64,000 nucleotides of DNA, taken from assembly GCA_002269645.1 (NCBI GenBank), contig NIVC01003110.1, positions 1 to 64,000 of the forward strand, given 5' to 3'. This stretch comes from Macrostomum lignano (Eukaryota). Shown here piece after piece: positions 17,504-61,000 of the stretch. Within the stretch, counting starts at the first letter, position 1. The number at the start of each line of letters is the position of its first letter. The translations under genes were made by a program, and so were the position numbers. The notes beneath the pieces were generated by a model that worked only from the letters and a program-made list of their open reading frames with translations, was not told the DNA's origin and made no database searches.

Positions 17504-17508
17504 ATCTA

Positions 17509-17573
<65 letters not shown>

Positions 17574-22496: not shown

Positions 22497-22545
<49 letters not shown>

Positions 22546-23026: not shown

Positions 23027-23065
<39 letters not shown>

Positions 23066-23132
23066 GTCTGCCTGTCTGTCTGCCTGTCTGTCTGTCTGTC
23101 TCTGTCTGCCTGTCTGTCTGTCTCTGTCTGCC

Positions 23133-23175
<43 letters not shown>

Positions 23176-23324
23176 GTCTGCCTGTCTGTCTGTCTCTGTC
23201 TGCCTGTCTGTCTATCTGTCTGTCTGTCTTAGTGTCTTAGTGTCTGTCTGTCTGTCTGTCTGCCTGTCTGTCTTAGTGTCTTAGTGTCTTAGTGTCTGTC
23301 TGTCTTAGTGTCTGTCTGTCTTAG

Positions 23325-23381
<57 letters not shown>

Positions 23382-36387: not shown

Positions 36388-39300
36388 AACAACAACAGAA
36401 CAACAGAATACGCAGTTAGCGTCACATGGCGCGCTTCAAGGCCAGGTCGCGAATGAACGCCACGCCGCCGGCCGAATCCGGGGAGCCGGCGTCAGCCAGC
36501 AGGCAGTCGACGAAACGCCGAGTGCGCGCCTGCCCCCGCCGGTAGGGTGCCTGCAGCGTTAGCAGCAGCACCTCCTGCACCGGCTCTGGGCAGTACGACT
36601 CGGCGCGGATGATGTGGCCTGCCAGCTGGAGTCGCCGACGGCGCAACAGGTCGCTTGGACGGACCAGGCCGGCGCGGCGATACAAAGCCGCGTTGGTCAC
36701 TCGCTCGTAGCCGATCTTGAAGGCGGCGCGCAGCAGGCCAGCGTGCGCCGCGTCAACTTGCTGCTCGAGCGACTCCGTCAGCGTCCATGTCTCGGCGTTG
36801 TACAGCAGGACGGTCTCGATCACCGCCTGGAACAACGCCGCCCTCTGGAGGCAAGCCCGCGGCGATGCCGCAGATCCTCGCGGACGCCGGGAACCAGACC
36901 GCCGAGGTAGACGAACTGCTGACAACGCGGAAGCTCTGTCGCCTGTCCATCAGCGCCTCGGCATAAAATTACAGCCTCGATGTCGTCCGGCACGCAGAGC
37001 ACGACGGTTTTCTGCGTGTTGACCACCAGGCTGACACTCGCCGCAACAGCAACTAGCTTGTCCAGTTGTCGCTGGGCGCCCTTGACAGTTGAGGACAGCA
37101 GGGCGAGGTCGTCGGCGTAGCCAAGCACGCTGAGTTGCCTCTCCAGTTGACGTCGACCCACGCGTCGCCGCAACAGAAAGCCGTCGTCGTTGGTAGAAAG
37201 AGCGGTCTGCAGCACCCAGTCAAGCACCAGAACGAACAGGAACGGCGCAAGCGTATCTCCCTGAAGCACCCCGGAGGATGTCTCAAAGAAGTCCGATAGG
37301 CCGTCCGGTGTTGCAACAGCAGCTTTCGTCTCACGGTACATTGCCATGATGGCGGAAATTAGCTGCTCTGGCACGTTGCACGCACGGAGCACCTTTGGGA
37401 GCACAGACCTGACGACCGAGTCGAATGCCTTCTTGAAATCTATGAAGATAACAATCAGGATCGACTGGCGTATCCGTGCTTTCTCGATGACTCACCGAAG
37501 AGCCAGGATCTGCGTTACTGTGCCGCGATGGGGCCGGAACCCGTTCTGCTCAGGACGCAGGTACGGATCCAACACAGGCTGAAACCGCGATAACAGCATC
37601 CGGTTGAACAGCTTCGCAGCGCAGGACTGAAGGCAGATACCTCGATGCTCCTCAAGCCTCGTGGTGCCCGGCTTCTTAGGAACTGCGACGATGTGCGCCG
37701 TGGTCCATTCGTTGGGTGCCTCCACACCGAAGAGCACGCGATTCATCACTCTGGCGACCTCACTGGCCACACAGTGGATGCGCAGCGCCTCGATTGGCAC
37801 CTCGTCCGGACCCAGCGCTTTCCCGCCCGGTGACTGTTGGGCGAGCCTCACAACGTCGGCTGTGCTGACTGGTGCTAGGCTGAAGCTCTCCTCTGCCGGC
37901 AACGGCATCTCCGGTGACAGCGTCAGACTGTCTGGCAGCGGCGGTGGCGGCGCGTTGACAATGGCAGCGAATAACTCACGCAGCTCGTTCCTGCGCTCGT
38001 CCGCAGAGTCGTCTGCCAGGTTTAGAGGAATGCACCGAGCATTGATAGCCAACCAGGCCACACGGCCTCTGGCATCGGGCCCAGCGGCAGAGACGGCCCG
38101 TATGGCGTAATCAACAGCAGCCTGCTGGCGCTGCAGATAGACAGCCGCCAAGGCCTCCTCTGCCTCGCGTGTTGGTCGCCTGCTCAAACAGAGTCTCTCT
38201 AGCTCTTCCCTCGCTAGCCGAATCGCGGGGTCGTCTTGCCATACCGGCTGCTCCTTCTGGGCCGGTCGCATCAGCGGGACTGCTTGTTCCGCGGCGGCTC
38301 GAACTGCAGCGCACACCGCGTAATCGGCACCTCCACGCTTGCCGCCGAGCGCAGTGATGAAAGCGCTAGCAAAGCGGCTGTGCGTGTTGGCGTCCCTGAG
38401 CGCGCGGTAGTGGCCGCTTTGGCGAACGGTAAAGCGGATCGCGAAGAAGAAGGTCGCAGACGAGGAGTCGATGATCGGACCGCAGAGCCAGCGGCATGAT
38501 GGCGCGGCAATTGACGACGCGGCGGCGCTCGTGGAAGCGTACCAGCACATGATCGAGCTGTGCCTGCCTCCGTGTTGCGTTCCGGCCGCGCGCATTCCTC
38601 CGCCTCCGCTTGCAGCCCACGAGGGTCGCGAGCCTGCGGGGGAGCTTGCGGAAGCAGTTGTTGGCCAACACCATGTCCTGCCTCTCTAGGAAGCCTCCAG
38701 CGCTCCGGTGTTGCCGTTCTCACGAGGTGTGACGTACAGTGACCACTCGGACCTACACAAAACCGCGTTTAGGTCTCCGAGGATTATCACTGTGTCACGC
38801 TGCGCTGTTGCCTCACCTGTACCGAGAGCTGCTCAAAGAATTCTTGAGCCTCGTCAGGTCGGGTGGCAGGAGACGCGTACGCGCAGAACAGACGAGCGTT
38901 CCGGCCGCGAAGCCGAACGTCGACCCGGAGCAGCCGAGGGGACAGAGAGACGCAGCGACAGCTCTGCTGCAGCCTCGGTCCGACCAGCGCTCCAACTCCT
39001 CCACGGCCTCGTTGGTCCGCCGATGTGTAGTAGAGGGTCCATCCGGCGCCCAGATCCTCACAGTGAAGCCCCGGATCAGCCTTGATAGACACCTGCAGTG
39101 CGATGACGTCACAGCTTAGGTCGTGCGCTAGTTTTGCCAGAACCCCTCTCCGCCAGGCGGCCTTGAGCGTGCCGCAGTTCAGCGTCCCGACCCGAAGCGT
39201 GCCCTGTGGTACGGCTGGGGCTCGATGTACATGTAGATTAGCCTCTCAGTCCCTGGCGCCACCCAGAAGATCCGTATGGGCCAGCGCAGCAGCTCGGCGG

Positions 39301-41997: not shown

Positions 41998-43643
41998 TTA
42001 TTATTAGGTCAAGTCAGGATAATAGCCATAAGCCCTAGCCATGAGCATAACAAACAATGTTATATTTTTTTATAAAAATGGCTTTTTTTAGAAAATTTGG
42101 CACCCAAAAATATAGATAGGTTGTATCATGCGCTTTCAAAAATACTACATCTTTTTACAAAAAAACCCTAGACGCTCTTTCAAATACCTTAATAATTTTA
42201 TAAATATCGTAACTGGTAACTCGCATCATAACTCGTGTAAAAATTTAACCTTTTGAACAAATACTAAATACATCGGATTATACTGGCAAAACAGGCTCCT
42301 TAAGCCTGAGCCAAATTTAGGCCTACTACTACTACTTTAGGCCCTACTAAAGGCTTTTTAAGTAAGTAAGTTTAGTAAGTTTTAGCAGAAGTAAGTTATA
42401 AAATAAGTGAGTTTTGGCATAAAAAGTAATTGTAAAATGCAAGTCTAATATAATATAATAATGAATAGTTTTTTAGCTGAATTTAGGCAATATCTTCAGG
42501 CTTTGATGCACTATACACTTAACTTTGCAGAAACTTTGCAGCCCCAAAAATGGCATTCAATTAAATTTTCTATGATGATTAATAATTAGGCCTATTCTCA
42601 TTTGGCCGTTGTTATTTGTTTGGTGACCAGATAAATAGCATTTTTGCTATTTGTCCAGTTAAATTGCTAACACATGTATCTATTTGTTTCGTGATTAGGC
42701 CTAATATTCTAGATTTTTAAGACCTTTTCTTGTATACCAAATAATATTTTCTTGTATAGTAGTGTAAGCAAAGCAATGTATTCAATTTGGCATAATTTGG
42801 TATATAAGACACACACTAGTATAACAACATAATAATCAAGATATGATTAAGAAATCTTTGAAGTCTATGAATATTTATTCTTGTAGTTTTTATAAAATAG
42901 ATATTTAAGCATTATCTAGTAACTAGACAAATAGGTCTAACCACATCACTATTGGTCCAGTTACCAAACAAATAACAATTGCCTTCTTATTTTGTTCTTG
43001 ATTTGTTTTGTGTTTATAAATTTTTTGTTCAATCCAACCAACCAACCAATCAATCTAACCAATCCAACCAACTGAAAAACAAGACAATTTAAAGACAATT
43101 AAAATTATTGCTTAACAATTCCTTGCAAGTTTTCTAATAAGGACCACTAGCAGTAGGCCTATATTTATTATAATGCTATACTTATGATTTGTAGGAAATT
43201 TTTGGAGGGTATTTCTTAATTTCAATGTTTGTACCAGACAAATGCATATATTCTAGCAATGTTTTATGACTGTTTACTCTTCTCCTTTGAGGCTATACTT
43301 ATATTTTTCAATTGTAAAAGGCACTAATCAAATTATTTAATGTCTTATGCATTTGTCTATCTATCAAATTGTAGCCATTTATTATACTGGTAGCTATCCT
43401 AACCTTTTTCTTAATTGTTAACTGGTATTTCAAAGGCTGCTAGAAGATTATCTTTGATTCTAAATGAGTCAGCAGTATAAAAGTATGCTTATACTACTAT
43501 AAGTGCTGTAGTACAAGCATCTGTAGAGCTACAAGAATGACCCACTTGACTTGACTTGACTTAGCTGCAGGGCTGTCCCGGAGGGGACACAGCGGGAAGG
43601 CGCGGGCGCCCATTCCGCTAGTCCCTGAACGGCCGACGCGTCG

Positions 43644-44204
43644 CTATGGACGGAGGGTTGGCGCCGCCCAGGGAGGTCCCCCAGTGTCGCCAGCAGCTAT
43701 GGTGCTCTCTGGAAAGGAGAGTTCAGCCCTGCGGGTGGCCCGAAGGTAGCGCATGAGCTGATTAAAGTTTTCGGGTTTGCACGCTTCAGTAATAGATGTG
43801 TGTGGCCCGAGGTAAGTGAGTCTGGCCCACGTGAAGGCGGGACAGATGCTGACAAAATGCTCAGCGGTTTCGTCACCTGAGTTGCAGAAACTACAGGTGG
43901 CGTTGGTGGCGTTGCCCTGCAGGTACTGGTGCCTGGAGAAGCAGCCGTGACCAGAGAGGGTCATGGTGGCAGCCCGGATGTCTCTGCGCGAGAGGCGCAA
44001 GAGGAGCTTCCGGAGCTGGTGAGAGGGCTGAGGGACAGCGCCTCTGGATTGCCTGCAGTTCGTGCGGTTCGCCCAAGTCGAGCGGTGCTGAGTCCTGATC
44101 CACGCTTTGATGCGCGAGTCGATGACACAGCCAGGAATCGGGACAAGAGGTTCGGGGCCGAGAGAGGAGCCGGAGGCACCAACTTTTGCAAGGGTGTCAG
44201 CCAA
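43644..44204 (-). pseudogene. C-terminal part of LINE ORF2 (end of RNase H plus CCHC zinc knuckle)
   Basis: LADTLAKVGA, GPEP, SGHGCFSRH and C-x2-C...H-x4-C. Confidence 0.9.
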
Positions 44205-44383
44205 AGGTGCCTAAGGTGTTGACCGTGCCGATGGGCTGGAAGGCCGGGGAGTAGTCCGGTCGCAAGCGGTCCCCCTCCTGGTGTCGGGCCAGCCTTGAGG
44301 GTGCTATTGGCCTACTGCCCGGTCAGGTGGAGCGGCCGGGTGGGTACCGCGCCCCTTTGAGGGTAGCCCACCAACCTTTTATC

Positions 44384-45904
44384 ATGGCCTTCGAGCCGAC
44401 TATGGATAAACAAGCTATTTCTAGGGACGGGGACCCTTCTAAACCCCAACCTCAGTCCGAAGGACCGGCCGGCCCTGCTGGCAGATCCCAACCGACTGAT
44501 TCAACTGTGGCAAAGGAAGGACCGGCTGGCTCTGCTGGCAGATCCGACCAGAGCTACCAAACTCAAAATACCCTAAGACCTGCCAGCTCCGCTGGTGGAT
44601 CTAAGGGAACCGCGAGCTCTGAGCCTAAAGGACCGGCCAAATCTGGCAGATCCGATGAAGCTCAGCGGGCTCGGCTTGAGCGCAAACGCGCTAAACAACG
44701 CGCCAAAAGGCAGGCCAAGAAGGGAGCTGCGGGGGCCAAAGCGGCGGCGTCCACCATGGATGCTGAAGCGACTGGAGTCCCAAGGCAACCAGGCGGGCCG
44801 GCCGGTGGAAGCTCCAGTAGTTCAGCGGCGGCGCTCCCTGGAGCTGCTGCCGCGGCTGCTGAGGCCGAAACCACGGCGCAACAAATGGCCACTGCCAACA
44901 AGGAGGTTCCTTCGGGAGCTACCTTTGCGGCGAAGGCCAAGGCTAAAATCCCGGGAGTGATCATCCAAGGTCGCGACCAGGACTGGACCACTGATCAGCT
45001 TCAAAAAGTGTGGAGTGCTGTTGACTCCTATCTGATTGAGCTGACTGTCGAGGAGGGAATCTCCATCGGCGTTGAGCGGATGGTGCTGCGAAGCACATTC
45101 GTTCTTATTGCTCCTAGCAGCAAGGAGGACGCTCGGCGGCTGCTCCAGCGGCTACCGACGGTCTCCTTGGATGCTGACCTTGGTGGAGCTCTTTTTCTTC
45201 GCGAGGGCCAGCATCCAAAGACGATACCCTATGTGGTTTTCGTCCCTGCTAAGAGCACCGCAGCTGGACCAGACGTTATTCGCCGGGTCCTACTGCGTCT
45301 GAACCCTGACCTCCCTGCTAGTGGACTGGTGTATCACCGCAAAGTCCGCAGGGGGGAGACGGGCAACTCAATTGTCCTCGGCCTTTCCAGCACTTGGGCG
45401 AGTCGGTACCCTAATGGATCCTCTTTCCAGCTGGGTGCCCTCAAGCTCAAGATGCGCCGAGGAAAGTCTGCCAAAGGGAAGGCTACTGCCAACCCCGGCA
45501 TCTCCGGCAAGAGCGGGGCGCAGTCTAAGGCCCAAGGAAAGGCGCAAGCCGATCCCAAAGCCAAAGCTGCATCTCGCCCCTCTGCTAGCAGCAGTTCGGC
45601 GACCGCGGTAACGGCTCCGGCCGAGCCCCGGGAACCAAACCTGCCAGTCGGAGAAGGAGTTGAGGACGAGGCCGGGTCTTCGGAATCCAAGCTCTCCTCG
45701 GCCACCTTGGTGGGGTCTGAAGGTAAAGATGCAGGTGAGGAAGCTTCCTCCATCCTGTCATCGGAGCCTGAGGACTCTGCTGGGGGGCCGGTGGGGGTGA
45801 GGAGGCCATGGACGTCGACCAACTCCCATCTCCCAGTCAAGCCCCAGCGGCCTGGGACGAGGACGATCTGTTGTCCAAGTCTCCTTGATGGCCCTGGGCT
45901 CTAG
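44384..45904 (+). CDS. LINE ORF1 (gag-like nucleic-acid-binding protein), within the inverted segment
   Basis: Long Lys/Arg/Ala-rich ORF directly upstream of the APE ORF, starting from the first ATG at 44384. No CCHC knuckle seen. Confidence 0.75.
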   Translation: MAFEPTMDKQAISRDGDPSKPQPQSEGPAGPAGRSQPTDSTVAKEGPAGSAGRSDQSYQTQNTLRPASSAGGSKGTASSEPKGPAKSGRSDEAQRARLERKRAKQRAKRQAKKGAAGAKAAASTMDAEATGVPRQPGGPAGGSSSSSAAALPGAAAAAAEAETTAQQMATANKEVPSGATFAAKAKAKIPGVIIQGRDQDWTTDQLQKVWSAVDSYLIELTVEEGISIGVERMVLRSTFVLIAPSSKEDARRLLQRLPTVSLDADLGGALFLREGQHPKTIPYVVFVPAKSTAAGPDVIRRVLLRLNPDLPASGLVYHRKVRRGETGNSIVLGLSSTWASRYPNGSSFQLGALKLKMRRGKSAKGKATANPGISGKSGAQSKAQGKAQADPKAKAASRPSASSSSATAVTAPAEPREPNLPVGEGVEDEAGSSESKLSSATLVGSEGKDAGEEASSILSSEPEDSAGGPVGVRRPWTSTNSHLPVKPQRPGTRTICCPSLLDGPGL

Positions 45905-45927
45905 CCAGATATTGCATTTAATACAGT

Positions 45928-48743
45928 ATGACTAAGCTCCACGCTGCCAAAGGAGCGACATTCTGTCTGCAAATAAATTTACAGCATTGCGTATCTGCGT
46001 CAGTAAATCTGATAAAGATTGCTGAGCTGTACAGGCCAGGCCTCATCCTGATCCAGGAACCCTGGATGCGCAACGGTAAGTTGCCCAACATTCCCTCTGG
46101 CTACTCTGATTTTTATGTGTGTGGCCCGGGGAACAGCCGCCCTAGAGCGGCTATCCTCGCTGCTAGCCATCTCCAGGCTTGGCTGAGGACTGATCTCTCT
46201 GATGGAGACCTTTGCGTCATCCAATCTAATCATTTCTCTCCGCGTACGTGTCTTGTTGCCTCAGTTTATATCCCAGGCGACAGAGACCCTGCTCCCGAGA
46301 GTTTACTGCGCCTTGCGCAGTACTGCGAGTCCCAGAACGCTGAGCTGTGCTTAGGGGGCGACCTCAACGCGCACCACAAGCACTGGGGCAGCAAAGATAC
46401 CAACACTAGAGGAGAGGAGCTTCTGGCCCTCATCTCTAACACAAACCTCATGCTCTGCAACCGCGGCAGCACTCCTACCTTTAATAATGGCAGATGGACC
46501 GAGGTCCTCGACGCCACACTCGTTACCCCAAGACTCTTTGACAGAGTCAAGGAGTGGAGAGTCTGGTCTGAGGAGCCCTCCCTGTCTGACCACTGCTTTA
46601 TCGCCTTTAATATCGCGGACACTAAAACCCAGTCTCCGATCACTTGGAGACGCAATATCCGCAACACTGATTGGGCCGCCTACAAGGCTGCCCTTGATCT
46701 GCACCTGCAGGAACTCACGGACTTACGTCTGATTGAGACCTGCGAGGATGTGGATCATATGGCTGAGACGCTGACAGGTTGCATTATTGCAGCCTACGAA
46801 GCGGCTTGTCCTGCTCGCGCCTACAGAGGCAAGACCTTGGCGCCGTGGTGGAACCCGGAGCTGGGGAAACTCAGGCGGAAGGCCAAAAGCCTTCATCGCC
46901 GTGCCATGAAGACCGGAAACCCGGAGGACATGGAGCTTTTCCGGCAAGCCTCCCGCAATTTCGTGAAGCAGCCAAGATACCCTCGTTCCTGAGACTCACC
47001 CGCAATCTTATGCGGGCCTCTATCCAGCTGGGATACGTTCCCAAAAGCTGGACTGAAGCTCGAGTAGTCTTTATTCCCAAACCTGGGAAGGGTGACTACC
47101 AAAGCGTCAAGGCCTTCCGGCCAATTAGCTTAACGTCAGCAATGCTTAAGCTCACTGAGAGGCTTATTCTCTGGCGGCTGCTCTCCTGCGAGCTGACAGC
47201 GATGCCCCTCAGCAATAATCAGCACGCCTTCCGTACCGGGAGGTCGACTGACAGCGCCCTGCATGCGATTGTCGAAAAGATTGAACGGGCGGTACTGGGT
47301 GACGGTTACGCCCTGGCTCTCTTTCTTGACATTGTTGGCGCCTTCGACAACGTTATCTTTGAAGCGTTTCAGAGGGCCCTTCAAAATCGCAAAGCTCATG
47401 CTACCCTCATACGGTGGATCATGTACATGATCTCCAACCGTACGGTCACTGCCCAACTTCTTGGCAAACTGCCTCCACCAGAGTCTGTAAGGGTGGACCC
47501 CAAGGCGGAGTCCTCACCCCGACGCTCTGGAACCTGGTCATGGACGCTCTTCTGAGTGACTCCCGACCTGACCCCGTCTTCAAAGTCGGGTATGCTGATG
47601 ACGTCACGGCCATTGTGGCAGGACCGTCTCCCAGCACGCTCAGGGATCTGATGCAGAGCTTTATCCGCAAAGCAGAATCCTGGGCCAATGACAATGGTTT
47701 GGAACTCTCTGAGCCCAAAACCGTTGCCATTATGTTTACCAGCAGACTACGCTGGAACATACGTCCTCTGCAGCTCTACGGCAGAGATATTGCCTTCGCG
47801 CACCAGACCAGATGTCTCGGGGTCACACTTGACCACCGGCTCAAGTGGTCCTTCCACGTGAAAGCAAAAGCTAAGCGTGCCTCAGCCATCCTGGCCCAGC
47901 TCCGACGAGCACTTGGCACTTCTTGGGGTCTATCCCCAAAGCGGCTTTGGTGGATCTATACTTCCGTAGTTAGACCTGCCATTACGTACGCCTCTGTTGT
48001 CTGGGTTAGCGCTACCCAGGTCAAAAGCCATGCAGACCTGCTCAACACGATCCAAGGCAGAGCGTGTAGGCTCATCTGCAACGCCACCAGGTCCACGCCC
48101 TTTGCTGGCATGGGGGCCTTTCTTAATCTTCCGCCTCTTGACCTCTTCATCAGGGGTGAGGCGGCTAGAACGACGCGGCGTCTAATTGATGCCGGCGTCA
48201 AATTCATTTACATGAGAGCACCTGCTAAGCGGAACCTTGTCCCGCATAGCGATCTGTGCCTCAACTTTCTCAACGAGTGTCAGGCCAATCGCGTCTTCAC
48301 CGATGGCATTGCCTCAACGCTCAACCTGAGACAGCGCTACTCCGTAGCTATCGACTCGCGCGATAACATCAATGACCATTGGAACCCTGGTGAGCTTCAT
48401 TGCTACACCGACGGTTCTAAGCAGTCAGCCAACACCGGCTTTGGTGTTGGAATCTTTCTGAACGGGAGGGTCATCGCTACCCACGCTCAATACACTGGGG
48501 TCAACTCCAGTGTTTTCCAAAATGAAGTTCTGGCCATCAGCTCCTGCACTGCAGAGCTTCTCGCCACTGGCGTTACTGGTAAGAACATCATTTTCCATTC
48601 GGACAGCCAAGCTGCCTTGCACGCCATCAGTGGCTGCAGCACCAACTCTGCTACAGTCCTTGACTGTATCAAACTCCTCAATGTGTTGGGTTCCGCCAAC
48701 AAAATTACCCTTAAGTGGGTTCCGGGGCATGTGGGGATCCGAG
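45928..48743 (+). pseudogene. LINE ORF2 (APE-RT-RNase H) with an internal deletion near 46965 and a frameshift near 47470
   Basis: APE motifs QINLQH, LIQEPW, GGDLNAHH and SDH. RT motifs FIPKPGK, RPISL, QHAFR, FLDIVGAFDNV, PQGGVLTP and YADD. RNase H motifs YTDGSK, QNEVLAI, HSDSQAAL and WVPGH. The linker containing the usual SPGxDG motif is missing. Confidence 0.92.
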
Positions 48744-49745
48744 GAATGACCCACATAAACTAAGTTAGCTGAAATATTCTACATACCTACATTCTACATA
48801 TTGACATACCTATTGACCAAAAATTATCTCTATATATACTTCTAAACAGTCAGAATCAACATTAGAAAATTGGCCTCCAAATCTTTTTTTTGCAAATCAC
48901 AAATGTAGCATCTTGATATATTGCAAATCATTATTTTCTAAAAGTTTTTATTAATTTATTCAAATTTTGAATGCAAAAAATAACTATTTTATTTAGTTTA
49001 ACAATAACCACATGTTTAACTCTAGACCAACACACGTTTATTAACAAAGAAATGTTTAAGCACTTTGTAATTGGTAGTTCTTTAAAATTAGAAAGGACCA
49101 GTGATGGAAGTACCAGAAGTTATTTTAAAAAAAAAGCACTGGTACTGGAACAAGTACTAGAAGTAACTTTCCTTGAAACCAAAAGGTACTTAACTGAAGG
49201 TTATTTTTTCATGGTAACTTGCCCAATACTTTCTATTATAAGAGGAAAGGGGAATTAAAAGAATCGGTTAAAATAGTAAAAATTACCAAAAAAAATCAAT
49301 AGATAAGAGAACTTGAAAAGCTAAATTCATTTATTTCTATGACAATTTTGATAATAATTATCAATGACTATAACTATTTAAAATGATCAATTTTCCTTAA
49401 TTAAGATAAAAAAAAGTTAACATTTTTTATTTATAGGGATTTTTAATTTTTTATTTACTTCATTAAAAATATAAAAATATTTACAAAATTAAAAAAAATA
49501 TTATAATAAATACAATAAATGTTAGGGCCTACACAGGCCAAATATAATATATTAATTAATAGCTCCTAATTGTTTTTGATATATAAGATTTATTTATAAG
49601 AAAATAAGCCAATTATTTATGATCTAATTGGCTTATTTTAGACATCTCATTTGGAATTGAAGCTCTTCTATATTATTTCTATATATTAGGCCCAATAGTA
49701 ATGATTGAATCTGTCATTATAGATTCCTAGACCCTTTGCCTACAA

Positions 49746-49924: not shown

Positions 49925-51295
<1,371 letters not shown>

Positions 51296-51633
51296 AAAGG
51301 ATCCAAGGGACGTAGGGAGAGTCAGGGAGAGACCAGAGTTTAACAATATATGTTTTAGAGTCAGACAGACATTGCCTGACATTCTGCGCAGTACCCCAGC
51401 CAACAATGTCTCAAACCCTAATTTTACACGAATGTGCTCCATTTTATGTCTACCTCTTCTATCCTACTAACTATTAACAAGTTTTTGTTTGTGTATGGCC
51501 TTAGATTTCAGAATACATGCAAAAGTAGTTCCGGGTATTGGAATTCCCCGGGTTCAAAATCCGCGGGTTTCAACAGCTTGTAGCTTATAAAGAAAATATT
51601 TAACTATAATATGTTGCAGATAAAGCTGACTCA

Positions 51634-52883
51634 ATGGCATCAGTTGTTCACTCTGATGAAGCAGTTTCTATTGAACAAAACACTTCTAATGTAAATTCTG
51701 GCAAACAATCCAAGCTGCCTAGTGACAGTCGCATTGAACTGGGTGACATCACTCAGCACAATATTAGGCAGTTGAGAATTATCAACCAGGTAGGTTAAAT
51801 GCTTTGAATGCTACCAAGTGCTTGGATAATCATTCAGATTGCAGAGCGCCTGAATAATCAGATTGTCAAGTGCTCGGATAAAATCATTAAAATTGCCAAG
51901 TGCCTGGATAATCATTAAGATTGCCGAGTGCCTAGATAATCATTAAGATTGCCGTGTGCCTGGATAATCATTAAAATTGCTGAGTGCCTAAATAATCATT
52001 AAGATTGCCGAGTGCCTAGATAATCATTAATATTGCCGAGTGCCTGGATAATCATTAATATTGCCGAGTGCCTAGATAATCATTAATATTGCTGAGTGCC
52101 TGGATAATCATTAATATTGCCGAGTGCCTGGATAATCATTAATATTGCCGAGTGCCTAGATAATCATTAAAATTGCTAAGTGCCTAGATAATCATTAATA
52201 TTGCCGTGTGCCTGGATAATCATTAAAATTGCCGAGTTCCTAAATAATCATTAAAATTGCTGTGTGCCTAGATAATCATTAAAATTGCTGAGTGCCTAGA
52301 TAATCATTAATATTGCCAAGTGCCTGGATAATCATTAAAATTGCCGTGTGCCTGGATAATCATTAAAATTGTCGAGTGCATGGATAATTATTAATATTTT
52401 CGAGTGCTTTAGCTAATTATCAGCAGAATCCTGTTACCATGGTAATGAGAAACTTGAGCAAATTCCAACACTCAAACCCAGGTTGTGTTCCCAGTTTCCT
52501 ACACCGACAAATTCTACGACGACATTTTGGAGAACGGCGAACTGGGCCGACTGGCCTACTTCAACGATATCGTTGTCGGCGCAGTCTGCTGCCGCATCCA
52601 ATCGGAGGCTGGGCAGCGCCGGCTGTACATCATGACGCTGGGCTGCCTGGCGCCCTACCGGGAGCTGGGCGTCGGCACTAAATTATTAGAATACGTGTTC
52701 GAAATCTGTTCGCGAGATAAAAATATTGACAATATATTTTTGCACGTGCAGACTAGCAACGAAGGCGCTCTGGCGTTCTATAAGAAATTCGGCTTTGAAA
52801 TTGTCGATACGGCGTATAACTATTATAAGCGAATTGTGCCACCGGACGCCTACGTGCTGCAGAAGAATCTAGTGCGCAGTTGA
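51634..52883 (+). CDS. NAA50: N-alpha-acetyltransferase 50 (NatE catalytic subunit). Exons: 51634-51789, 52482-52883 (185 aa)
   Basis: RIELGDITQHNIRQLRIINQ|VVFPVSYTDKFY, LAYFNDIVVGAVCCR, LYIMTLGCLAPYRELGVGT, LHVQTSNEGALAFYKKFGF and YYKRIVPPDAYVL. Confidence 0.97.
51830..52400. repeat. 28-bp minisatellite (GTGCCTGGATAATCATTAATATTGCCGA), NAA50 intron
   Basis: 28-nt period measured (52021 to 52049). Confidence 0.94.
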
Positions 52884-53154
52884 AGCCTTCGTTGATTTAC
52901 GTCTCTGTTAGTTAATTATATATGGACTACTATTAAATTAGACCATTTATATTGTAACTGCGCTTAATCTGCTTTTTATAAACCTTTGTCATCCAGTTAT
53001 TTTGAATGGTCCTTTTAAGTACAATATATTAACCTAATTAATAATACTTAAGCCTTTATAATACATCGGCTTTTATTATAGTACGAGTTTTGGTTACATT
53101 TTGACTTGAAATTTGCTTCCTTCTGGGGGTTTTCGATTCTTTAGAGGGTATTTA

Positions 53155-54965
53155 GGATGATAGGGGAATTCCCCATTTATCCGAATAGGTAGCTGTTATC
53201 TTTGATGATAGGGGGATTCCCCATTTATCCGAATAGGTAGCTGTTATCTTTGATGATAGGGGAATTCCCCATTTATCCGAATAGGTAGCTGTTATCTTTG
53301 ATGATAGGGGAATTCCCCATTTATCCGAATAGGTAGCTGTTATCTTTGATGATAGGGGAATTCCCCATTTATCCGAATAGGTAGCTGTTATCTTTGATGA
53401 TAGGAAAATTCCCCATTTATCCGAATAGGTAGCTGTTATCTTTGATGATAGGGGAATTCCCCATTTATCCGAATAGGTAGCTGTTATCTTTGATGATAGG
53501 GGAATTCCCCATTTATCCGAATAGGTAGCTGTTATCTTTGATGATAGGGGAATTCCCCATTTATCCGAATAGGTAGCTGTTATCTTTGATGATAGGAAAA
53601 TTCCCCATTTATCCGAATAGGTAGCTGTTATCTTTGATGATAGGAAAATTCCCCATTTATCCGAATAGGTAGCTGTTATCTTTGATGATAGGAAAATTCC
53701 CCATTTATCCGAATAGGTAGCTGTTATCTTTGATGATAGGAAAATTCCCCATTTATCCGAATAGGTAGCTGTTATCTTTGATGATAGGGGAATTCCCCAT
53801 TTATCCGAATAGGTAGCTGTTATCTTTGATGATAGGGGAATTCCCCATTTATCCGAATAGGTAGCTGTTATCTTTGATGATAGGGGAATTCCCCATTTAT
53901 CCGAATAGGTAGCTGTTATCTTTGATGATAGGAAAATTCCCCATTTATCCGAATAGGTAGCTGTTATCTTTGATGATAGGGGAATTCCCCATTTATCCGA
54001 ATAGGTAGCTGTTATCTTTGATGATAGGGGAATTCCCCATTTATCCGAATAGGTAGCTGTTATCTTTGATGATAGGAAAATTCCCCATTTATCCGAATAG
54101 GTAGCTGTTATCTTTGATGATAGGGGAATTCCCCATTTATCCGAATAGGTAGCTGTTATCTTTGATGATAGGGGAATTCCCCATTTATCCGAATAGGTAG
54201 CTGTTATCTTTGATGATAGGAAAATTCCCCATTTATCCGAATAGGTCGCTGTTATCTTTGATGATAGGAAAATTCCCCATTTATCCGAATAGGTAGCTGT
54301 TATCTTTGATGATAGGGGAATTCCCCATTTATCCGAATAGGTAGCTGTTATCTTTGATGATAGGGGAATTCCCCATTTATCCGAATAGGTAGCTGTTATC
54401 TTTGATGATAGGGGAATTCCCCATTTATCCGAATAGGTAGCTGTTATCTTTGATGATAGGAAAATTCCCCATTTATCCGAATAGGTAGCTGTTATCTTTG
54501 ATGATAGGGGAATTCCCCATTTATCCGAATAGGTAGCTGTTATCTTTGATGATAGGGGAATTCCCCATTTATCCGAATAGGTAGCTGTTATCTTTGATGA
54601 TAGGAAAATTCCCCATTTATCCGAATAGGTAGCTGTTATCTTTGATGATAGGGGAATTCCCCATTTGTCCGAATAGGTAGCTGTTATCTTTGATGATAGG
54701 AAAATTCCCCATTTATCCGAATAGGTAGCTGTTATCTTTGATGATAGGGGAATTCCCCATTTGTCCGAATAGGTAGCTGTTATCTTTGATGATAGGAAAA
54801 TTCCCCATTTATCCGAATAGGTAGCTGTTATCTTTGATGATAGGAAAATTCCCCATTTATCCGAATAGGTAGCTGTTATCTTTGATGATAGGGGAATTCC
54901 CCATTTGTCCGAATAGGTAGCTGTTATCTTTGATGATAGGGGAATTCCCCATTTGTCCGAATAGG
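53155..54965. repeat. 48-bp minisatellite (GATGATAGGGGAATTCCCCATTTATCCGAATAGGTAGCTGTTATCTTT), about 38 units, between NAA50 and INTS2
   Basis: Near-perfect units, with two variants: GGGGAATTCCCC and GGAAAATTCCCC. Confidence 0.97.
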
Positions 54966-55069
54966 TATTTCCAACTGTTTGATAAGGGAAGTGCACTCTG
55001 ATGTAAAACCATCTACAGAATGTAAAAAAGGCATTCGGCTCTTTTCTTTTGTTACAGCGGGCAATTATT

Positions 55070-58000
55070 ATGCAGCCATCTTTGAATGGTTGCGAAGCGA
55101 ACCGGCAACCGCACAGTGCTGGCAGTTATTACAATAGCAATTTCAACTCGGCTAGCGGCGGCGACGAAGACTGCAACTTTGCCAAACTCTATCGAGCTGT
55201 TCGGTGCGGCCGTCTAGTTGCCAGTTGGTCCGAATCTGAGCTGCTGGCCTTGGCGCCGCTGCTATCCTGGCATCGGGACCGGCTAAATCTGGCCGAACTA
55301 TTGGCAGCCTGCCAACCGGAAGCGAATAGCTTACATTTCGGTCACGTGCTTGACTATGCCAATTCCTTGCATTATAGCGTAGAATTTGATGCCATCGGGC
55401 ACGACGCTAAGGTGGACCTGGAGCGGCGGGTTGTCGATAAGTGCGGCCTGATTGGCGATTTCGTCTCCGTGGTCTGGCCGTCAGCCGCGTCCAGTGGCGA
55501 GTTCGAATCCTGCGACCGGCCGGACCAGCAGGCCAGGATGTTGCTTCGGTGAGGCGATTCGCGTTGTTATTTTACATGCTCATTGATTTTTTGACAATTT
55601 TTGTTAGTGTTTTATCCTTCAAAACTATAAAATATTCTTTTTCGAAGTTGTCTTGATTATATTTGAATAATGAACCCTTGCTATCCTTGCCATTGATTAT
55701 CCTTGCCAATCATCATTGATTATCCTTGCCAATCTCCTTTGATTATCCTTGCCAATCTCCTTTGATTATCCTTGCCAATCATCATTGATTATCCTTGCCA
55801 TTGATTATCCTTGCCAATCTCCTTTGATTATCCTTACCAATCATCATTGATTATCCTTACCAATCATCATTGATTATCCTTGCCAATCTCCTTTGATTAT
55901 CCTTGCCAATCTCCATTGATTATCCTTACCAATCATCATTGATTATCCTTGCCAATCTCCTTTGATTATCCTTGCCAATCTCCATTGATTATCCTTGCCA
56001 ATCATCATTGATTATCCTTGCCAATCTCCTTTGATTATCCTTGCCAATCTCCTTTGATTATCCTTGTCAATCTCCATTGATTATCCTTGCCAATCATTGA
56101 TTATCCTTACCAATCATCATTGATTATCCTTGCCAATCTCCTTTGATTATCCTTGCCAATCTCCATTGATTATCCTTGCCAATCATCATTGATTATCCTT
56201 GCCAATCTCCTTTGATTATCCTTGCCAATCTCCTTTGATTATCCTTGTCAATCTCCATTGATTATCCTTGCCAATCATTGATTATCCTTACCAATCATCA
56301 TTGATTATCCTTACCAATCATCATTGATTATCCTTTCCAATCTCCATTGATTATCCTTGCCAATCTCCTTTGATTATCCTTGCCAATCATCATTGATTAT
56401 CCTTGCCAATCTCCTTTGATTATCCTTGCCAATCTCCTTTGATTATCCTTGTCAATCTCCATTGATTATCCTTGCCAATCATTGATTATCCTTACCAATC
56501 ATCATTGATTATCCTTGCCAATCTCCTTTGATTATCCTTGCCAATCTCCTTTGATTATCCTTGCCAATCTCCTTTGATTATCCTTGCCAATCTCCATTGA
56601 TTATCCTTGCCAATCATTGATTATCCTTGCCAATCTCCTTTGATTATCCTTGCCAATCTCCTTTGATTATCCTTGCCAATCTCCATTGATTATCCTTGCC
56701 AATCATTGATTATCCTTACCAATCATCATTGATTATCCTTGCCAATCATTGATTATCCTTACCAATCATCATTGATTATCCTTGCCAATCATCATTGATT
56801 ATCCTTGCCAATCTCCTTTGATTATCCTTGCCAATCTCCATTGATTATCCTTGCCAATCATCATTGATTATCCTTGCCAATCTCCTTTGATTATCCTTGC
56901 CAATCTCCATTGATTATCCTGACTAATCATGCCTAAATCGGCCCTAATTTTATAATTTTCTTAGGAGAATGGGCATACACTAAATGTACTCAGTTTTTCA
57001 GTTCAGCTTCCAAATTCAATTCCTTCAAAAACACTACAGAGACATCCTAGTGGCCGTTCGCACCACGGAAGCTCGCGGCTTCGACGCCTTCAACTCTGCC
57101 GTCGCCGTTGCTACGTCGCCAGCCGACGACAACAGCTCAGACAGCAATGACAGCCCGGCGGCCACCGAGCTGGCCGACTCCGAGCTGCTGTTCCACCACT
57201 GCCTGGCCACCCTAGTCGCTGTCAATCATCGCCTGCCGGACCTCCTGCCGCCCCGCCGCCTTCTGCCCGGCCTTCTACGCTTGCGCCGAGGCCGTCGCCT
57301 ACTTCAACACTTGGCTGCTCTGCAGCCGGCCGCCTGGCGCAGCCTCGTCCGTCAGCTGCTGGCCTGCGGTCCCGGCCGGCCAATCCGTTGGGCCCTCAGC
57401 CTGGCCGAGTTGGATCCCGGCCAGTCCGCTTGGCTAGCCGAGATGTGCGCCTCAGAGCGGCGCTATCCGGACCTGCTGGCCGGCCTGCTGACCCAGGCTA
57501 CTCCGCCAGCCGCTAGGCCAGCCGCTCTGCGTCGCTTATTGATGCACGAGTCACCAGACACGCGGGCCTGGTTTCTAGCGGCCGTCACAGCCGCCGCGTC
57601 TGGCGGACGGCAGCAGCAGCAGCAGCAGCAGCAACAGTCTCCAACATCGCCTGGTCCGGCATTCCTAGCCGCTTGTCGACCAGATCTACTGGCCGAGTTG
57701 CGCTCGGTTGCATCGGCTAGTGCTATCGCCTCCTCGCCTGCGGCTGTCATCCTAGCCAGTCAGCTAGTGAAGCTTTACGCTGTACTGCACTGCCACGCGC
57801 CAACTCAACCGGCTTTGACCGAATCGGAGCTGGCCGCCCTCGCCGAACTGTTGACATCGGCTGGGCCGGATGCAACTGGCGGATTAACGGCTGTGTGCGT
57901 AGCCTTTGCTCTGATAGCTTATACAGCGTTTAACGATACCCAACAGGCCAGACTGTTGGCCTGGCTACGCCGGCTGGTTCGGGAGCCCGGCCGGCCCGAC

Positions 58001-61000
58001 TGTCGGTACAAGGTCTGTTGTAGCTTATTGGCTTAAATAATCGAACTGTGCCATTCATTCTTGTTAGTCACGTGACTGCATGAAGTGCATGAAGTTTTCT
58101 TACAGAACTATAGGACCATTCAAACAGTAGGAAGAAAATCAAGCATTTTTCGGCCCGTCGAACTGCCTGAAGAGAAAAGAGGCGATAGAGGAGATTTAAG
58201 GAGGGATGAGATGAGAGATGGGATGTGAGAAGATGGGGGGGAGAGGATAGAGCAGAAATAACAGAGACGAGAGGAGATAAAAGAGGAAGAGGGAAGAAAA
58301 AGGAGGAGAGGAAAGAGTGCTCAAAGTAACGCAGATGAGGAGGGAAGAAGTGAAAGAGGAAATAATAGGGGGGAGAGAAGAGAAGAGGAGAGAAAAAGGA
58401 CAGGGAAGAGAGGAAAGAATAGAGATAAGACCTGAGATAAGACACAAACCTTGAGCGGGCCCGATTGCTATTGAGATTTTCAAAAGACAAAAAAGCGATT
58501 GTTTTTTTTTCTAATTGTTATGTTTAGTAAAGAAATGCTCCATTGATTTTTTTATTTGTAAAAAAGACAAGAAATAGGATATTGATATACTTTTATAATG
58601 CATATTAGCTCAAGCCCAACCCCCCCCCAAAATGTTTTACTAAGAAACGAGGGGCCAAGAGCCCCAGATGAATGTGTCATTGAAGTTAATCGGCTACCTA
58701 TTTGTTATAAACCAAACATTTTATCCTTATAAACCAAACAGGAGGTGCTGCTCCTCTGCGCCAGCCATCTGCACTCCAGACAGCAGGGCCAGGCCTGCGA
58801 ATTTCTAGACGGCCTACTGGGCCTTCGTCAGGCTGCCAAACGAGCCGCACAGCAGCAGCAGCCGCATCTGCCCTCTACTCATCAACAGCTTCAACAGCAG
58901 CAGCAGCATCATCTTGTACAGCTGGCGCCGTCTCTCGTGAAAGTGTTCCTTACTGACCTGCTGCCCGAGCCGGCCGCCGCAGCGCACGCTGTTCGAGTTG
59001 AAGTGACGCCCGGCCTGACGTCAACAACTGAAGGTCATCTGCCTGCGCATTGCGTGCTACAGCTGCTGCAGATGCGTTCGTTTGCTAAGTATAAGGTAAA
59101 TTTTTGCTCTGTGTTCATGGTATTAAACTTATAGGCCTTTTAAACTAGGGAATAAAATCTGATGTGTGAGATTTTTAATGGCGACCTTAGTTTGGTGAGA
59201 TTTCGATTGAGAGTGCTTAGTTTGTTGAGATTTCGATTGAGAGTGCTTAGTTTGGTGGGATCTGTATTGAGAGTGCTTATTTTGGTGAGATATCGATTGA
59301 GAGCTTAGTTTGGTGAGATATCGATTGAGTGCTTAGTTTGGTGAGATATCGATTGAGTGCTTAGTTTGGTGAGATATCGATTGAGTGCTTAGTTTGGTGA
59401 GATTTTGGAGTGCTTATTTATCGACTTCAAAGACTTCGCTTCGTTGCATTCCTAGGCTGACGTCACTGGCTGGGTGCTGCGCCAGATCAAAGAGTGCCGC
59501 GCTCCGCTCAACACGGTCATGCCAACCCTAATCGAGGCGTTCGCCAAATCTCTCGTACAACCGCACGACAAATGGAGCGCCCCAGCCTACGAGGTCATCA
59601 GGCAGACCGATATTCTAGCATTCTACACGCCCTCCGCCTGCGGTCCGGCAGCCGCCTGCGCGCCCCTTCGTTGCTTTGATAACGAAGGCGAGAACGAGCT
59701 CGAAATGTCTACTATTGAACGAGATTTAACCCCGCAACTATTGATGCTGTACTATGTACTGTGCTACGTTGATTGCCTGTTCGATTCTAGGCTAGAAATC
59801 TCTCGGTCAGGCCGATCTGTGCATCGCTACGATAGCAATCTGCTGTCGCGAATTCCTGTCGGTTATCTGGTCAGGCATTGCCAGCGAAGGCCCGAACACT
59901 ATAGGGTGCTCTATCCGCTGCTGGTGCGGCTGCTTGTTCTGCGTATGCCGCATCTGCTGCTAACTGAACTGCCTATTCAGGTAATGCGCTGAGTAATACT
60001 GAATATACCCCTAGTCCTTTGGTAGCACCGTTACCCCTTCCCGTCATTCGGTGACTGCCCCCATCCGGTCATTCGGTGACTGCCCCCATCCGGTCATTCG
60101 GTGACTGCCCCCATCCGGTCATTCGGTGACTGCCCCCATCCGGTCATTCGGTGACTGCCCCCATCCGGTCATTCGGTGACTGCCCCCATCCGGTCATTCG
60201 GTGACTGCCCCCATCCGGTCATTCGGTGACTGCCCCCATCCGGTCATTCGGTGACTGCCCCCATCCGGTCATTCGGTGACTGCCCCCATCCGGTCATTCG
60301 GTGACTGCCCCCATCCGGTCATTCGGTGACTGCCCCCATCCGGTCATTCGGTGACTGCCCCCATCCGGTCATTCGGTGACTGCCCCCATCTTGTCATTCG
60401 GTGACTGCCCCCATCTTGTCATTCGGTGACTGCCCCCATCCGGTCATTCGGTGACTGCCCCCATCCGGTCATTCGGTGACTGCCCCCATCCGGTCATTCG
60501 GTGACTGCCCCCATCCGGTCATTCGGTGACTGCCCCCTTTCAGTCATTCGGTGACTGCCCCCTTCCGGTCATTCGGTGACTGACCCCTTTCAGTCATACG
60601 GTGACTGCCCCCATCCGGTCATTCGGTGACTGCCCCCATCCGGTCATTCGGTGACTGCCCCCATCTTGTCATTCGGTGACTGCCCCCATCCGGTCATTCG
60701 GTGACTGCCCCTTCCGGTCATTCGGTACTATACTGATATTGGTATTGCAGTCTAAGCACAATATATTGATATAGAATATCTATTCACTGCCCGCAGGACG
60801 AGCTGGCCCTGTCTCAGGACAGCTGCCCGGACGACCTTCGCCCAGTCCAGCTGCTGCCGCCGCCTGGCTCGCCGCCGCCTCGTCCAACAGATTTTGTCGG
60901 CTGCAGCGCCGCCGAGCTGGCCTCCGGTGGACACGCCCTGGCCGGGATTATGACCCGGCTAAACTGGCTAGCCAATCGCAAGGCCGACTGTCTGATACCC

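What the first reader, a model, noticed from the sequence alone, without database searches (positions are those of the whole stretch)
43535..48754. Near-full-length RNase H LINE with a 4.5-kb 5' inversion: twin-priming signature outside L1
Seen: an 11-bp TSD (GAATGACCCAC) encloses, in element orientation, the inverted 5'UTR-ORF1-APE-RT-RNase H segment, then the sense 3' piece, then the (AAGTC)n tail. ORF2 breaks at GHVGIRG and resumes at LADTLAK, with only about the conserved N-E codons missing. The TSD begins GAATGA, matching the expected G-AAT-GA of that G-N-E motif. Established: twin priming of mammalian L1 gives exactly this geometry with a short microhomology at the internal priming site. 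Inference: a LOA/I-group element used twin priming, and the second cDNA ran to about the 5' end of the RNA. Inversions this long are unusual.
Basis: partly seen in the sequence, partly recalled or inferred. Interest (0 to 1): 0.78.

Follow-up and report, generated by a model that had tools for sequence, protein, structure and literature searches.

The report
Flatworm LINE copy with inverted 5' part
A dead copy of a jumping gene (an RNase H-bearing LINE, most likely in the flatworm Macrostomum lignano) was inserted with its first 4.5 kb flipped. The layout is what the "twin priming" accident known from human L1 produces, so this is a rare but not unprecedented example of that accident outside L1.

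Summary
An exact 11-bp duplication (GAATGACCCAC, 43535-43545 and 48744-48754) brackets a 5,198-bp GC-rich LINE in AT-rich DNA. The 3' 659 bp lie on the minus strand: ORF2 C-terminus, 3'UTR and (AAGTC)n tail. The 5' 4,539 bp lie on the plus strand: 5'UTR, ORF1, APE, RT and most of RNase H.

Against a colinear relative (P0002/L001), the two pieces abut in element coordinates, with only Asn-Glu missing. In each half, the strand continuous with the duplicated target is the antisense (cDNA) strand. That is the specific prediction of twin priming.

Nearest relatives are Macrostomum lignano gene models, locally about 98% identical.

- **Microhomology claim:** In register, at most 3 nt (GAA) can match.
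- **Missing evidence:** no same-family DNA could be fetched, so the microhomology and the claim that the cDNA reached the 5' end remain untested.
- **Copy state:** it carries a roughly 350-bp internal deletion and a frameshift in RT.
- **Precedent:** one 5'-inverted insert of the I-group LINE Nimb-2_DR has been reported (PMC4245944).

Verdict: a twin-priming-type insertion, a new member of a known kind, of moderate interest.

The parts
43535..43545 (+). Left copy of the 11-bp target-site duplication GAATGACCCAC. Its 3' end is the inferred primer for the tail-primed cDNA. The last 2 nt (AC) are in phase with the tail repeat, giving a 2-nt microhomology at the 3' junction.
43546..43562 (-). 3' tail (AAGTC)3AA of the element, read on the minus strand.
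   Evidence: TRF: period 5, 100% match. The same CCCTGCAGCTAAGTCAAG... 3' end is seen in relative L001.
43563..43646 (-). 3'UTR plus the ORF2 stop codon (43644-43646). It contains blocks conserved with L001: TAGCGGAATGGGCG and CCCTGCAGCTAAGTC.
43647..44204 (-). ORF2 C-terminal 186 aa in sense orientation. It starts L-ADTLAK (the end of the RNase H motif) and includes CSFCNSGDETAEHFVSIC, a C-x2-C-x8-H-x4-C motif. Together with the tail and 3'UTR this forms the 659-bp sense segment, which is cDNA no. 1.
   Evidence: 55% identity to P0002 residues 405-586.
44204..44205 (.). Inversion junction, where the 3' ends of the two inferred cDNAs meet. An imperfect 9-bp tandem GCCAAAGGT/GCCTAAGGT (44200-44218) straddles it.
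44205..44386 (+). 5'UTR of the inverted segment (182 nt). An in-frame stop lies at 44252-44254. Whether 44205 is the true 5' end of the element is unknown.
44387..45904 (+). ORF1 (505 aa, intact, no Pfam family).
45928..46992 (+). ORF2 N-terminal part containing the APE endonuclease. It ends at a stop created by the frame change at an internal deletion.
   Evidence: Exo_endo_phos_2 E 1.9e-21, Exo_endo_phos E 9.1e-15.
46958..46975 (+). Approximate site of an internal deletion of about 117 aa (about 350 bp) in the APE-RT linker, with a frame change.
   Evidence: P0005 residues about 32-148 and P0001 residues 140-236 have no counterpart in the window.
47073..47827 (+). Reverse transcriptase domain, split between two frames by a frameshift near 47445-47490.
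   Evidence: RVT_1 profile 1-109 in one frame and 108-204 in another.
48395..48743 (+). RNase H domain, truncated at Pfam profile position 125 of 141. It ends ...KWVPGHVGIRG, with the last G codon completed by the TSD. This is the RNA-3'-most end of the inverted 4,539-bp segment, which is cDNA no. 2.
48744..48754 (+). Right copy of the TSD. Its minus-strand complement ...GGGTCATTC-3' is the inferred primer for the internal (second) reverse transcription.

Best explanation
This is a single retrotransposition event of an APE/RT/RNase H LINE with an (AAGTC)n tail, probably in Macrostomum lignano. It was resolved by twin priming.

**Inferred steps**
1. The element's endonuclease made nicks staggered by 11 bp at ...CTACAA|GAATGACCCAC|ATAAAC.... 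This left two 11-nt 3' overhangs.
2. The plus-strand end ...CCCAC-3' annealed to the RNA tail, with a 2-nt AC/GU overlap. It primed cDNA no. 1 through the 3'UTR and the last 186 codons of ORF2.
3. Before cDNA no. 1 went further, the minus-strand end ...TCATTC-3' annealed inside the same RNA at the Gly-Asn codons of the RNase H GNE motif, using 1-3 nt in register. It primed cDNA no. 2, which ran 4.5 kb towards, and perhaps to, the RNA 5' end.
4. cDNA no. 1 stopped at the Leu codon, 5-8 nt short of the second priming site, presumably blocked by the second primer or RT complex.
5. The two cDNA 3' ends were joined at 44204/44205 and second strands were filled in.

**Result**
The layout is TSD, inverted 5' part, sense 3' part, tail, TSD, with only Asn-Glu lost.

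**Shown versus inferred**
The layout, the TSD, the breakpoints and the strand polarity are shown by the sequence. The order of events, the use of one RNA molecule and the microhomologies are inferred.

The copy is dead: ORF2 is split by the inversion, there is a roughly 350-bp deletion, and RT has a frameshift. It has no evident function.
For: - **Single exact 11-bp TSD** at the composite's two ends, coinciding with the GC-content boundaries.
- **Normal family 3' end.** The sense 3' segment ends in the family's normal tail, shared with relative L001.
- **No own 3' end.** The plus-strand segment has no 3'UTR or tail of its own. It stops in RNase H where the minus-strand segment resumes, with only residues 403-404 (N, E) of the colinear relative P0002 missing.
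- **Opposite strands.** BLASTN of colinear L001 maps its 5' part to the plus strand and its 3' part to the minus strand.
- **Canonical order exists.** One M. lignano gene model, P0001, carries both parts colinearly, so the uninverted arrangement exists in that genome.
- **Polarity.** In both halves, the strand that continues 5' to 3' from the TSD is antisense to the element, as a target-primed cDNA must be (direct reading).
- **No recombination substrate.** There are no inverted repeats at 44205 or 48743 that could mediate a recombinational inversion.
- **TSD length fits.** 5'-inverted L1 inserts carry 10-20-bp TSDs. A 5-bp TSD LINE gave no inversions, and an I-group LINE with about 12-bp TSDs gave one (PMC4245944).
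- **Microhomology is compatible.** About 70% of inverted L1s show 2-5-bp microhomology at the 5' junction (PMC2912911). The possible in-register GAA fits that range.
Against: - This is a single locus.
- No reads, no empty-site allele and no second copy of the family were available. Assembly correctness, the microhomology at both junctions and the position of the true 5' end are therefore untested.
- The attractive 6-nt complementarity (GAATGA) is one base out of register with the copy's own reading frame.
- A post-insertion inversion would produce the same gross layout.
Confidence: 0.8

Rival explanations
1. An ordinary full-length (or nearly full-length) insertion happened first. Later, a DNA-level inversion of its 5' 4.5 kb arose by breakage and rejoining or by replication-based rearrangement.
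For: It gives the same order of parts. The small 6-8-nt loss at one breakpoint is typical of end joining.
Against: One breakpoint would have to fall exactly at the element/TSD boundary, leaving all 11 bp of the TSD and no flank inside the inversion. That is roughly a 1-in-thousands coincidence for a 5-kb element. No inverted repeats sit at the two breakpoints.
Confidence: 0.07
2. It is an assembly artefact. A normal colinear insertion was mis-oriented internally by the assembler or by a chimeric long read.
For: The window is extremely repeat-rich, with 25 or more satellite arrays. The family is young and multicopy in M. lignano, with about 98% local identity to P0001. Both conditions make assemblies prone to error.
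Against: The artefact would need breakpoints exactly at the TSD boundary and within two codons of each other in element coordinates, with a clean 6-8-nt loss. No other copy of the family lies within the 64 kb to confuse the assembler. There are no Ns or low-complexity sequence at the junctions.
Confidence: 0.07
3. Two independent insertions lie side by side: a 5'-truncated 659-bp copy on the minus strand and a second copy on the plus strand.
For: 5'-truncated LINE copies are common (general knowledge). The region contains other retroelement debris at 36.8-38.6 kb.
Against: The plus-strand piece lacks any 3'UTR or tail, so it is not a product of tail-primed reverse transcription. The two pieces are complementary in element coordinates to within two codons; for two independent events I estimate the chance of that at about 0.004. 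Only one TSD pair exists and it encloses both pieces.
Confidence: 0.02
4. The event was twin-primed but used two different RNA molecules, or the endonuclease-independent end of a pre-existing break captured a second RNA.
For: The geometry is the same as for twin priming. The roughly 350-bp internal deletion lies only in the inverted part, which could mean a different, defective template RNA.
Against: The near-perfect abutment of the two segments (two codons lost) is most simply explained by one RNA on which the first RT was stopped by the second primer. With two RNAs, overlaps or larger gaps would be just as likely.
Confidence: 0.04

Closest known systems
5'-inverted L1 insertions of human and chimpanzee made by twin priming (Ostertag & Kazazian 2001; survey in Kojima 2010, PMC2912911)
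   Same: - One TSD pair of 10 bp or more.
- A sense 3' piece with its tail, and an inverted 5' piece whose 3'-most position abuts the 5' TSD.
- A small loss at the inversion point.
- A possible short microhomology at the internal priming site.
   Different: - The element is not L1. It carries an RNase H domain after RT and an (AAGTC)n tail instead of poly(A), and its host is a flatworm.
- The inverted part is 4.5 kb and includes the whole ORF1 and 5'UTR. From my own recollection, not checked here, most inverted L1s are also 5'-truncated.
- The frequency of such events in this family is unknown, against about 30% of recent L1 insertions.
Zebrafish Nimb-2_DR (Nimb clade, I group): one 5'-inverted insert among de novo events in chicken DT40 cells (Yamaguchi et al. 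2014, PMC4245944)
   Same: - An I-group LINE with ORF1/ORF2 and TSDs of 10-15 bp; here the TSD is 11 bp.
- A 5' inversion outside L1.
- It fits that paper's argument that 3' overhangs of 10 nt or more are needed for the second priming.
   Different: - That event came from an engineered element in a heterologous cell line. This one is a natural genomic copy in an invertebrate.
- The relationship of the present family to Nimb, as against LOA or I, was not resolved here.
LOA / I-type non-LTR retrotransposons of insects
   Same: - Domain order APE, RT, RNase H, then a C-terminal Cys/His motif.
- A separate ORF1.
- A short tandem-repeat tail rather than poly(A).
- The nearest named database hit is 'loa-3'.
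   Different: - Only about 30-37% amino-acid identity to insect relatives.
- ORF1 has no recognisable Pfam domain or zinc knuckles.
- No phylogeny against reference clades was made.

Membership tests
Twin-priming (5'-inverted) LINE insertion | A single pair of target-site duplications encloses both segments | tested here: met
   There is an exact 11-bp GAATGACCCAC at 43535-43545 and at 48744-48754 only, and neither segment has a TSD of its own.
Twin-priming (5'-inverted) LINE insertion | The 3' segment is in sense orientation and ends in the element's normal tail against one TSD | tested here: met
   Minus strand 44204 to 43546 ends ...CCCTGCAGCTAAGTCAAGTCAAGTCAA next to the TSD. Relative L001 has the same 3' end.
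Twin-priming (5'-inverted) LINE insertion | The 5' segment is inverted, its RNA-3'-most base abuts the other TSD, and the strand continuous with that TSD is the cDNA strand | tested here: met
   The plus strand reads sense from the 5'UTR (44205) to RNase H (48743) and abuts the TSD at 48744. The minus strand therefore runs from the TSD complement into antisense sequence.
Twin-priming (5'-inverted) LINE insertion | The two segments are adjacent in element coordinates, with only a small deletion or duplication at the inversion point | tested here: met
   Only N403-E404 of the colinear relative P0002 are missing, a loss of 6-8 nt.
Twin-priming (5'-inverted) LINE insertion | Microhomology between the target 3' overhang and the RNA at the internal priming site | tested here: inconclusive
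In register, the overlap is G (1 nt), or GAA (3 nt) if the Gly codon is GGA. Codon usage gives GGG+AAT a prior of about 8% and GGA about 25%. A family consensus was not obtainable.
Twin-priming (5'-inverted) LINE insertion | Microhomology or clean joining of the two cDNA ends at the inversion junction | not testable with these tools
   This needs the family's 5'-terminal consensus. The only relevant observation is an imperfect 9-bp tandem, GCCAAAGGT/GCCTAAGGT, across 44204/44205.
Twin-priming (5'-inverted) LINE insertion | An empty site with one copy of the TSD sequence | not testable with these tools
   There is no paralogous or allelic empty site in the window, and no eukaryotic genome collection was available.
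I-group (RNase H-bearing, LOA/Nimb/I-like) APE-type non-LTR retrotransposon | An N-terminal apurinic-like endonuclease and a reverse transcriptase in ORF2 | tested here: met
   Exo_endo_phos_2 E 1.9e-21. RVT_1 E 6.7e-13 and 1.2e-11.
I-group (RNase H-bearing, LOA/Nimb/I-like) APE-type non-LTR retrotransposon | An RNase H domain downstream of RT | tested here: met
   PF00075 E 3.8e-5 at 24.3 bits, just under the 25.8-bit cutoff because the inversion cuts the domain at profile position 125 of 141. Intact relatives carry PF00075. The GNE-x-AD motif is completed by the minus-strand piece.
I-group (RNase H-bearing, LOA/Nimb/I-like) APE-type non-LTR retrotransposon | Placement within a named clade (LOA, Nimb, I, ...) by RT phylogeny | not tested
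   No reference clade sequences were at hand. The only named relative is 'putative loa-3 dper', at 32% identity and E 4e-52.
L1 clade | A poly(A) 3' tail, and ORF2 without a post-RT RNase H (animal L1) | tested here: not met
   The tail is (AAGTC)n. An RNase H domain is present. The best relatives are LOA-like and not L1.

The most novel reading that the evidence does not exclude
Twin priming may be a regular outcome for this flatworm LINE family, and more generally for I-group LINEs whose endonuclease leaves 3' overhangs of 10 nt or more. If so, 5' inversion would be a general property of target-primed reverse transcription, set by overhang length. It would not be a peculiarity of L1 in mammalian cells. 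It would also be compatible with an element-encoded RNase H, and it would allow second cDNAs of more than 4 kb that reach the RNA 5' end.
Probability: 0.25. Interest if true: 0.55.

Novelty: new member of a known kind. Interest (0 to 1): 0.4.

Why it matters
5' inversions are treated in the literature as essentially an L1-in-human-cells phenomenon. Yamaguchi et al. 2014 concluded that they depend on both the LINE species and the host, and found one exception.

This copy is a clean natural example in an invertebrate. The element carries RNase H and has a microsatellite tail, the TSD is 11 bp, and the breakpoints are almost perfectly abutting. It supports the idea that the length of the target 3' overhang, rather than L1-specific or mammalian factors, permits the second priming event.

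The family appears young and multicopy, so it offers a place where the frequency of such events could be counted. On its own, this is one dead insertion with no functional consequence that I can see.

Tried and rejected
- **Other copies in the window.** BLASTN found only the self-hit. TBLASTN found only a distant RT at 37339-37716.
- **Empty-site paralogue.** I joined the two flanks and searched the window. There was no second site.
- **Same-family DNA from public collections.** None was found.
  - The M. lignano gene model P0001 is not on record in the contig index.
  - A protein search with the 186-aa C-terminal piece found nothing.
  - A metagenome scan by protein found nothing.
  - A metagenome scan by a conserved 3'UTR pattern found nothing, not even L001.
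  - The Logan contig L002 is only about 64% identical in DNA.
  - As a result, no local consensus for the Gly-Asn-Glu codons or for the 5' terminus could be made.
- **Inverted repeats at the inversion borders** as a recombination substrate: none found.
- **Empirical null for the TSD** from random window 30-mers. I rejected it because the window's satellite arrays inflate it.
- **Literature search** for twin priming in non-L1 LINEs. Only the single Nimb-2_DR event turned up, and all other hits concern L1, Alu or SVA. The original twin-priming paper is not held in the library.
- **Promoter motifs.** I considered reading Inr/DPE-like motifs to locate the true 5' end, and rejected this as too speculative for a flatworm element.

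Full report
**What is in the sequence**

Window 43535-48754 is a GC-rich block (55-62% GC) set in AT-rich DNA (28-30% GC). It is bounded by the exact 11-mer GAATGACCCAC at 43535-43545 and 48744-48754. These are the only two exact copies in the 64 kb; the one other near match has a mismatch and lies at 19853. The repeat cannot be extended at either end. About 0.03 exact copies of a given 11-mer are expected in the window. Even allowing +/-15 bp of slack at both element ends, a chance match is about 2e-4. A sampling null I ran from the window itself is inflated by the window's many satellites, and I do not rely on it.

**Anatomy**

Immediately right of the left repeat, the plus strand reads TTGACTTGACTTGACTT. 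On the minus strand this is the tail AAGTCAAGTCAAGTCAA (TRF: period 5, 3.8 copies, 100% match).

Continuing on the minus strand:
- an 84-nt 3'UTR with the stop codon;
- a 186-codon open frame (43647-44204) that begins L-ADTLAK and contains CSFCNSGDETAEHFVSIC.

From 44205 the plus strand carries:
- a 182-nt leader with an in-frame stop;
- an intact 505-aa ORF1 (44387-45904, no Pfam match);
- ORF2 with an APE endonuclease (Exo_endo_phos_2, E 1.9e-21);
- a reverse transcriptase split over two frames (RVT_1 profile 1-109 and 108-204);
- an RNase H domain that matches Pfam positions 4-125 of 141 and stops at ...KWVPGHVGIRG, at base 48743.

The insert is 5,198 bp: 659 bp in sense orientation on the minus strand and 4,539 bp inverted.

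**Relatives and the canonical arrangement**

A protein search with the RT-RNase H piece found gene models of the flatworm Macrostomum lignano as best hits. These are P0001 and P0003, whose long local stretches differ from the window at about 2% of residues. Next came a JGI contig protein, P0002 (59% identity), and then many insect 'uncharacterized' proteins at 30-37%, one of them named 'loa-3'. The window is therefore very probably M. lignano or a close relative, and the family is young there.

P0002 and its contig L001 are colinear...KWIPGHSGHPG-NE-LADSLAKAG.... BLASTP places the window's plus-strand piece up to P0002 residue 402 (Gly). It places the minus-strand piece from residue 405 (Leu), with the alignment continuing over P0002 residues 405-586, near its C-terminus. 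Exactly Asn-Glu is missing, a loss of 6-8 nt depending on how the Gly codon is assigned.

At DNA level, L001 157-1723 aligns to the window's plus strand and L001 2066-2533 to its minus strand. L001 ends with the same CCCTGCAGCTAAGTCAA... tail and shares a 3'UTR block, TAGCGGAATGGGCG. The tail is therefore the family's genuine 3' end. P0001 joins RNase H and C-terminal sequence in one gene model, so uninverted copies exist in M. lignano.

**Does the geometry fit twin priming?**

Twin priming makes a specific prediction beyond 'one part is inverted'. Each half must be a cDNA extended from a target 3' end.

With an 11-bp stagger, both broken ends carry 11-nt 3' overhangs:
- The left end is plus strand ...GAATGACCCAC-3'. 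Continuing 5' to 3' on that strand gives the antisense of the tail, the 3'UTR and the ORF2 C-terminus.
- The right end is minus strand ...GTGGGTCATTC-3'. Continuing on that strand gives the antisense of RNase H, RT, APE, ORF1 and the 5'UTR.

Both halves therefore have the required polarity, and their 3' ends meet at 44204/44205 (direct reading).

Other features also fit:
- The RNA-3'-most base of the inverted segment abuts the TSD, as in inverted L1s.
- The last two bases of the left TSD (AC) are in phase with the tail repeat. This is a 2-nt overlap of the kind expected when a primer anneals to a microsatellite tail.
- The first cDNA stops at the Leu codon, 5-8 nt from where the second primer would sit. 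This is most simply explained if both primers used one RNA and the first RT was halted by the second primer complex. That last point is inference.

**The microhomology claim**

The copy reads ...ATC CGA G|GA ATG ACC.... For that pairing, the element-derived part would have to end ...CGAGG, but it ends ...CGAG, so the match is one base out of register.

In register, the overlap between the TSD and the expected GGN AAY is G, or GAA if the Gly codon is GGA. That is 1 or 3 nt. Codon usage in the element's own ORFs:

| Amino acid | Codon counts |
|---|---|
| Gly | GGA 30, GGC 41, GGG 27, GGT 24 |
| Asn | AAC 42, AAT 22 |

This gives GGG+AAT a prior of about 8% and GGA about 25%. The 59%-identical relative uses GGT AAC GAG. 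One to three nucleotides is within the range reported for the 5' junction of inverted L1s, where about 70% have 2-5 bp (PMC2912911). The point can only be settled with the family's own consensus, which I could not obtain.

**Other qualifications**

- The copy is not simply 'near-full-length'. Relative to P0005 and P0001, about 117 residues (about 350 bp) of the APE-RT linker are missing near 46958-46975, with a frame change. RT has a further frameshift near 47445-47490. I cannot tell whether these were in the template RNA or arose later.
- Whether 44205 is the element's true 5' end is unknown. What is shown is a complete ORF1 plus 182 nt of leader.
- An imperfect 9-bp tandem, GCCAAAGGT/GCCTAAGGT, straddles the inversion junction. 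It might reflect junction microhomology. I leave it unexplained.

**Rivals**

- **Post-insertion inversion.** It would give the same order of parts. It requires one breakpoint to fall exactly at the element/TSD boundary, and there are no inverted repeats at the two breakpoints.
- **Misassembly.** This is conceivable in such repeat-rich DNA. It would need the same coincidences, and no second copy lies in the window.
- **Two independent insertions.** This is excluded for practical purposes. The plus-strand piece has no 3' end of its own, the two pieces abut within two codons, and one TSD pair encloses both.
- **Two-RNA twin priming.** This cannot be excluded, but it does not predict the near-perfect abutment.

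I put twin priming at about 0.8.

**Comparison with what is known**

Twin priming was proposed for L1. About 30% of human- and chimpanzee-specific L1 insertions are 5'-inverted, typically with 10-17-bp TSDs and short microhomologies (PMC2912911).

In the one systematic cross-LINE experiment I found (PMC4245944):
- Nimb-2_DR is an I-group LINE with 10-15-bp TSDs;
- an L2 element with 5-bp TSDs gave none;
- the authors argued that a longer 3' overhang is needed for the second priming.

The present copy has an 11-bp TSD and fits that argument. Full-text searches for 'twin priming' or 'twin-priming' with non-LTR terms returned otherwise only L1, Alu and SVA work. A natural example in an invertebrate RNase H LINE therefore seems unreported in the library searched, but the mechanism is known and has one precedent in the same LINE group.

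The element-encoded RNase H is no obstacle in principle. It acts on the RNA already copied, while the second primer anneals to RNA not yet copied (inference).

**Verdict**

The structure is real and well above chance. It is best explained as a single twin-primed retrotransposition event. It is a new member of a known kind and of moderate interest.

Noticed in passing
window 4218-35418 and 50477-60726: The window is crowded with 25 or more long tandem arrays. Minisatellites have periods of 19-68 bp: for example 7131-13406 (24-bp unit, 259 copies), 53156-54967 (48-bp unit, 38 copies) and 26002-27248 (48-bp unit, 26 copies, 99% match). Long microsatellites include (CTA)128 at 5593-5976, (TATC)189 at 16821-17573, (TGTC)245 at 22485-23432 and (AG)415 at 50477-51269. 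Each array has a different unit.
   Followed up: no
window 36823-38595 (minus strand): A second, unrelated reverse-transcriptase-bearing element lies in a 57-64% GC block. It hits RVT_1 at E 7.5e-13 and is only about 30% identical to the studied RT.
   Followed up: partly
window 19560-20339 (+) and 56984-58033 (+): Two long open frames have host-gene domains. One carries an MCM AAA-lid plus an MCM2-like winged helix (E 6e-33 and 7e-15). The other carries Integrator subunit 2 (E 2e-14). They are either large exons or retrocopies. The LINE lies between them in AT-rich DNA.
   Followed up: no
window 46958-46975 and 47445-47490: The studied copy has an internal deletion of about 350 bp in the APE-RT linker and a frameshift inside RT. 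Both lie in the inverted segment.
   Followed up: partly
window 44200-44218: An imperfect 9-bp tandem, GCCAAAGGT/GCCTAAGGT, straddles the inversion junction at 44204/44205. It may be a trace of how the two cDNA ends were joined.
   Followed up: no
L001 2405-2533 versus window 43527-43660 (minus strand): The 3'UTRs of two elements that are only 59% identical in protein share the blocks TAGCGGAATGGGCG and CCCTGCAGCTAAGTC just before the tail. This suggests a conserved 3' recognition signal for the reverse transcriptase.
   Followed up: partly
window 44387-45904: ORF1 (505 aa) is intact but matches no Pfam family and has no zinc knuckles. Its N-terminal third is low-complexity, with repeated GPAG(P/S)AGRS units at 44459-44552.
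   Followed up: no
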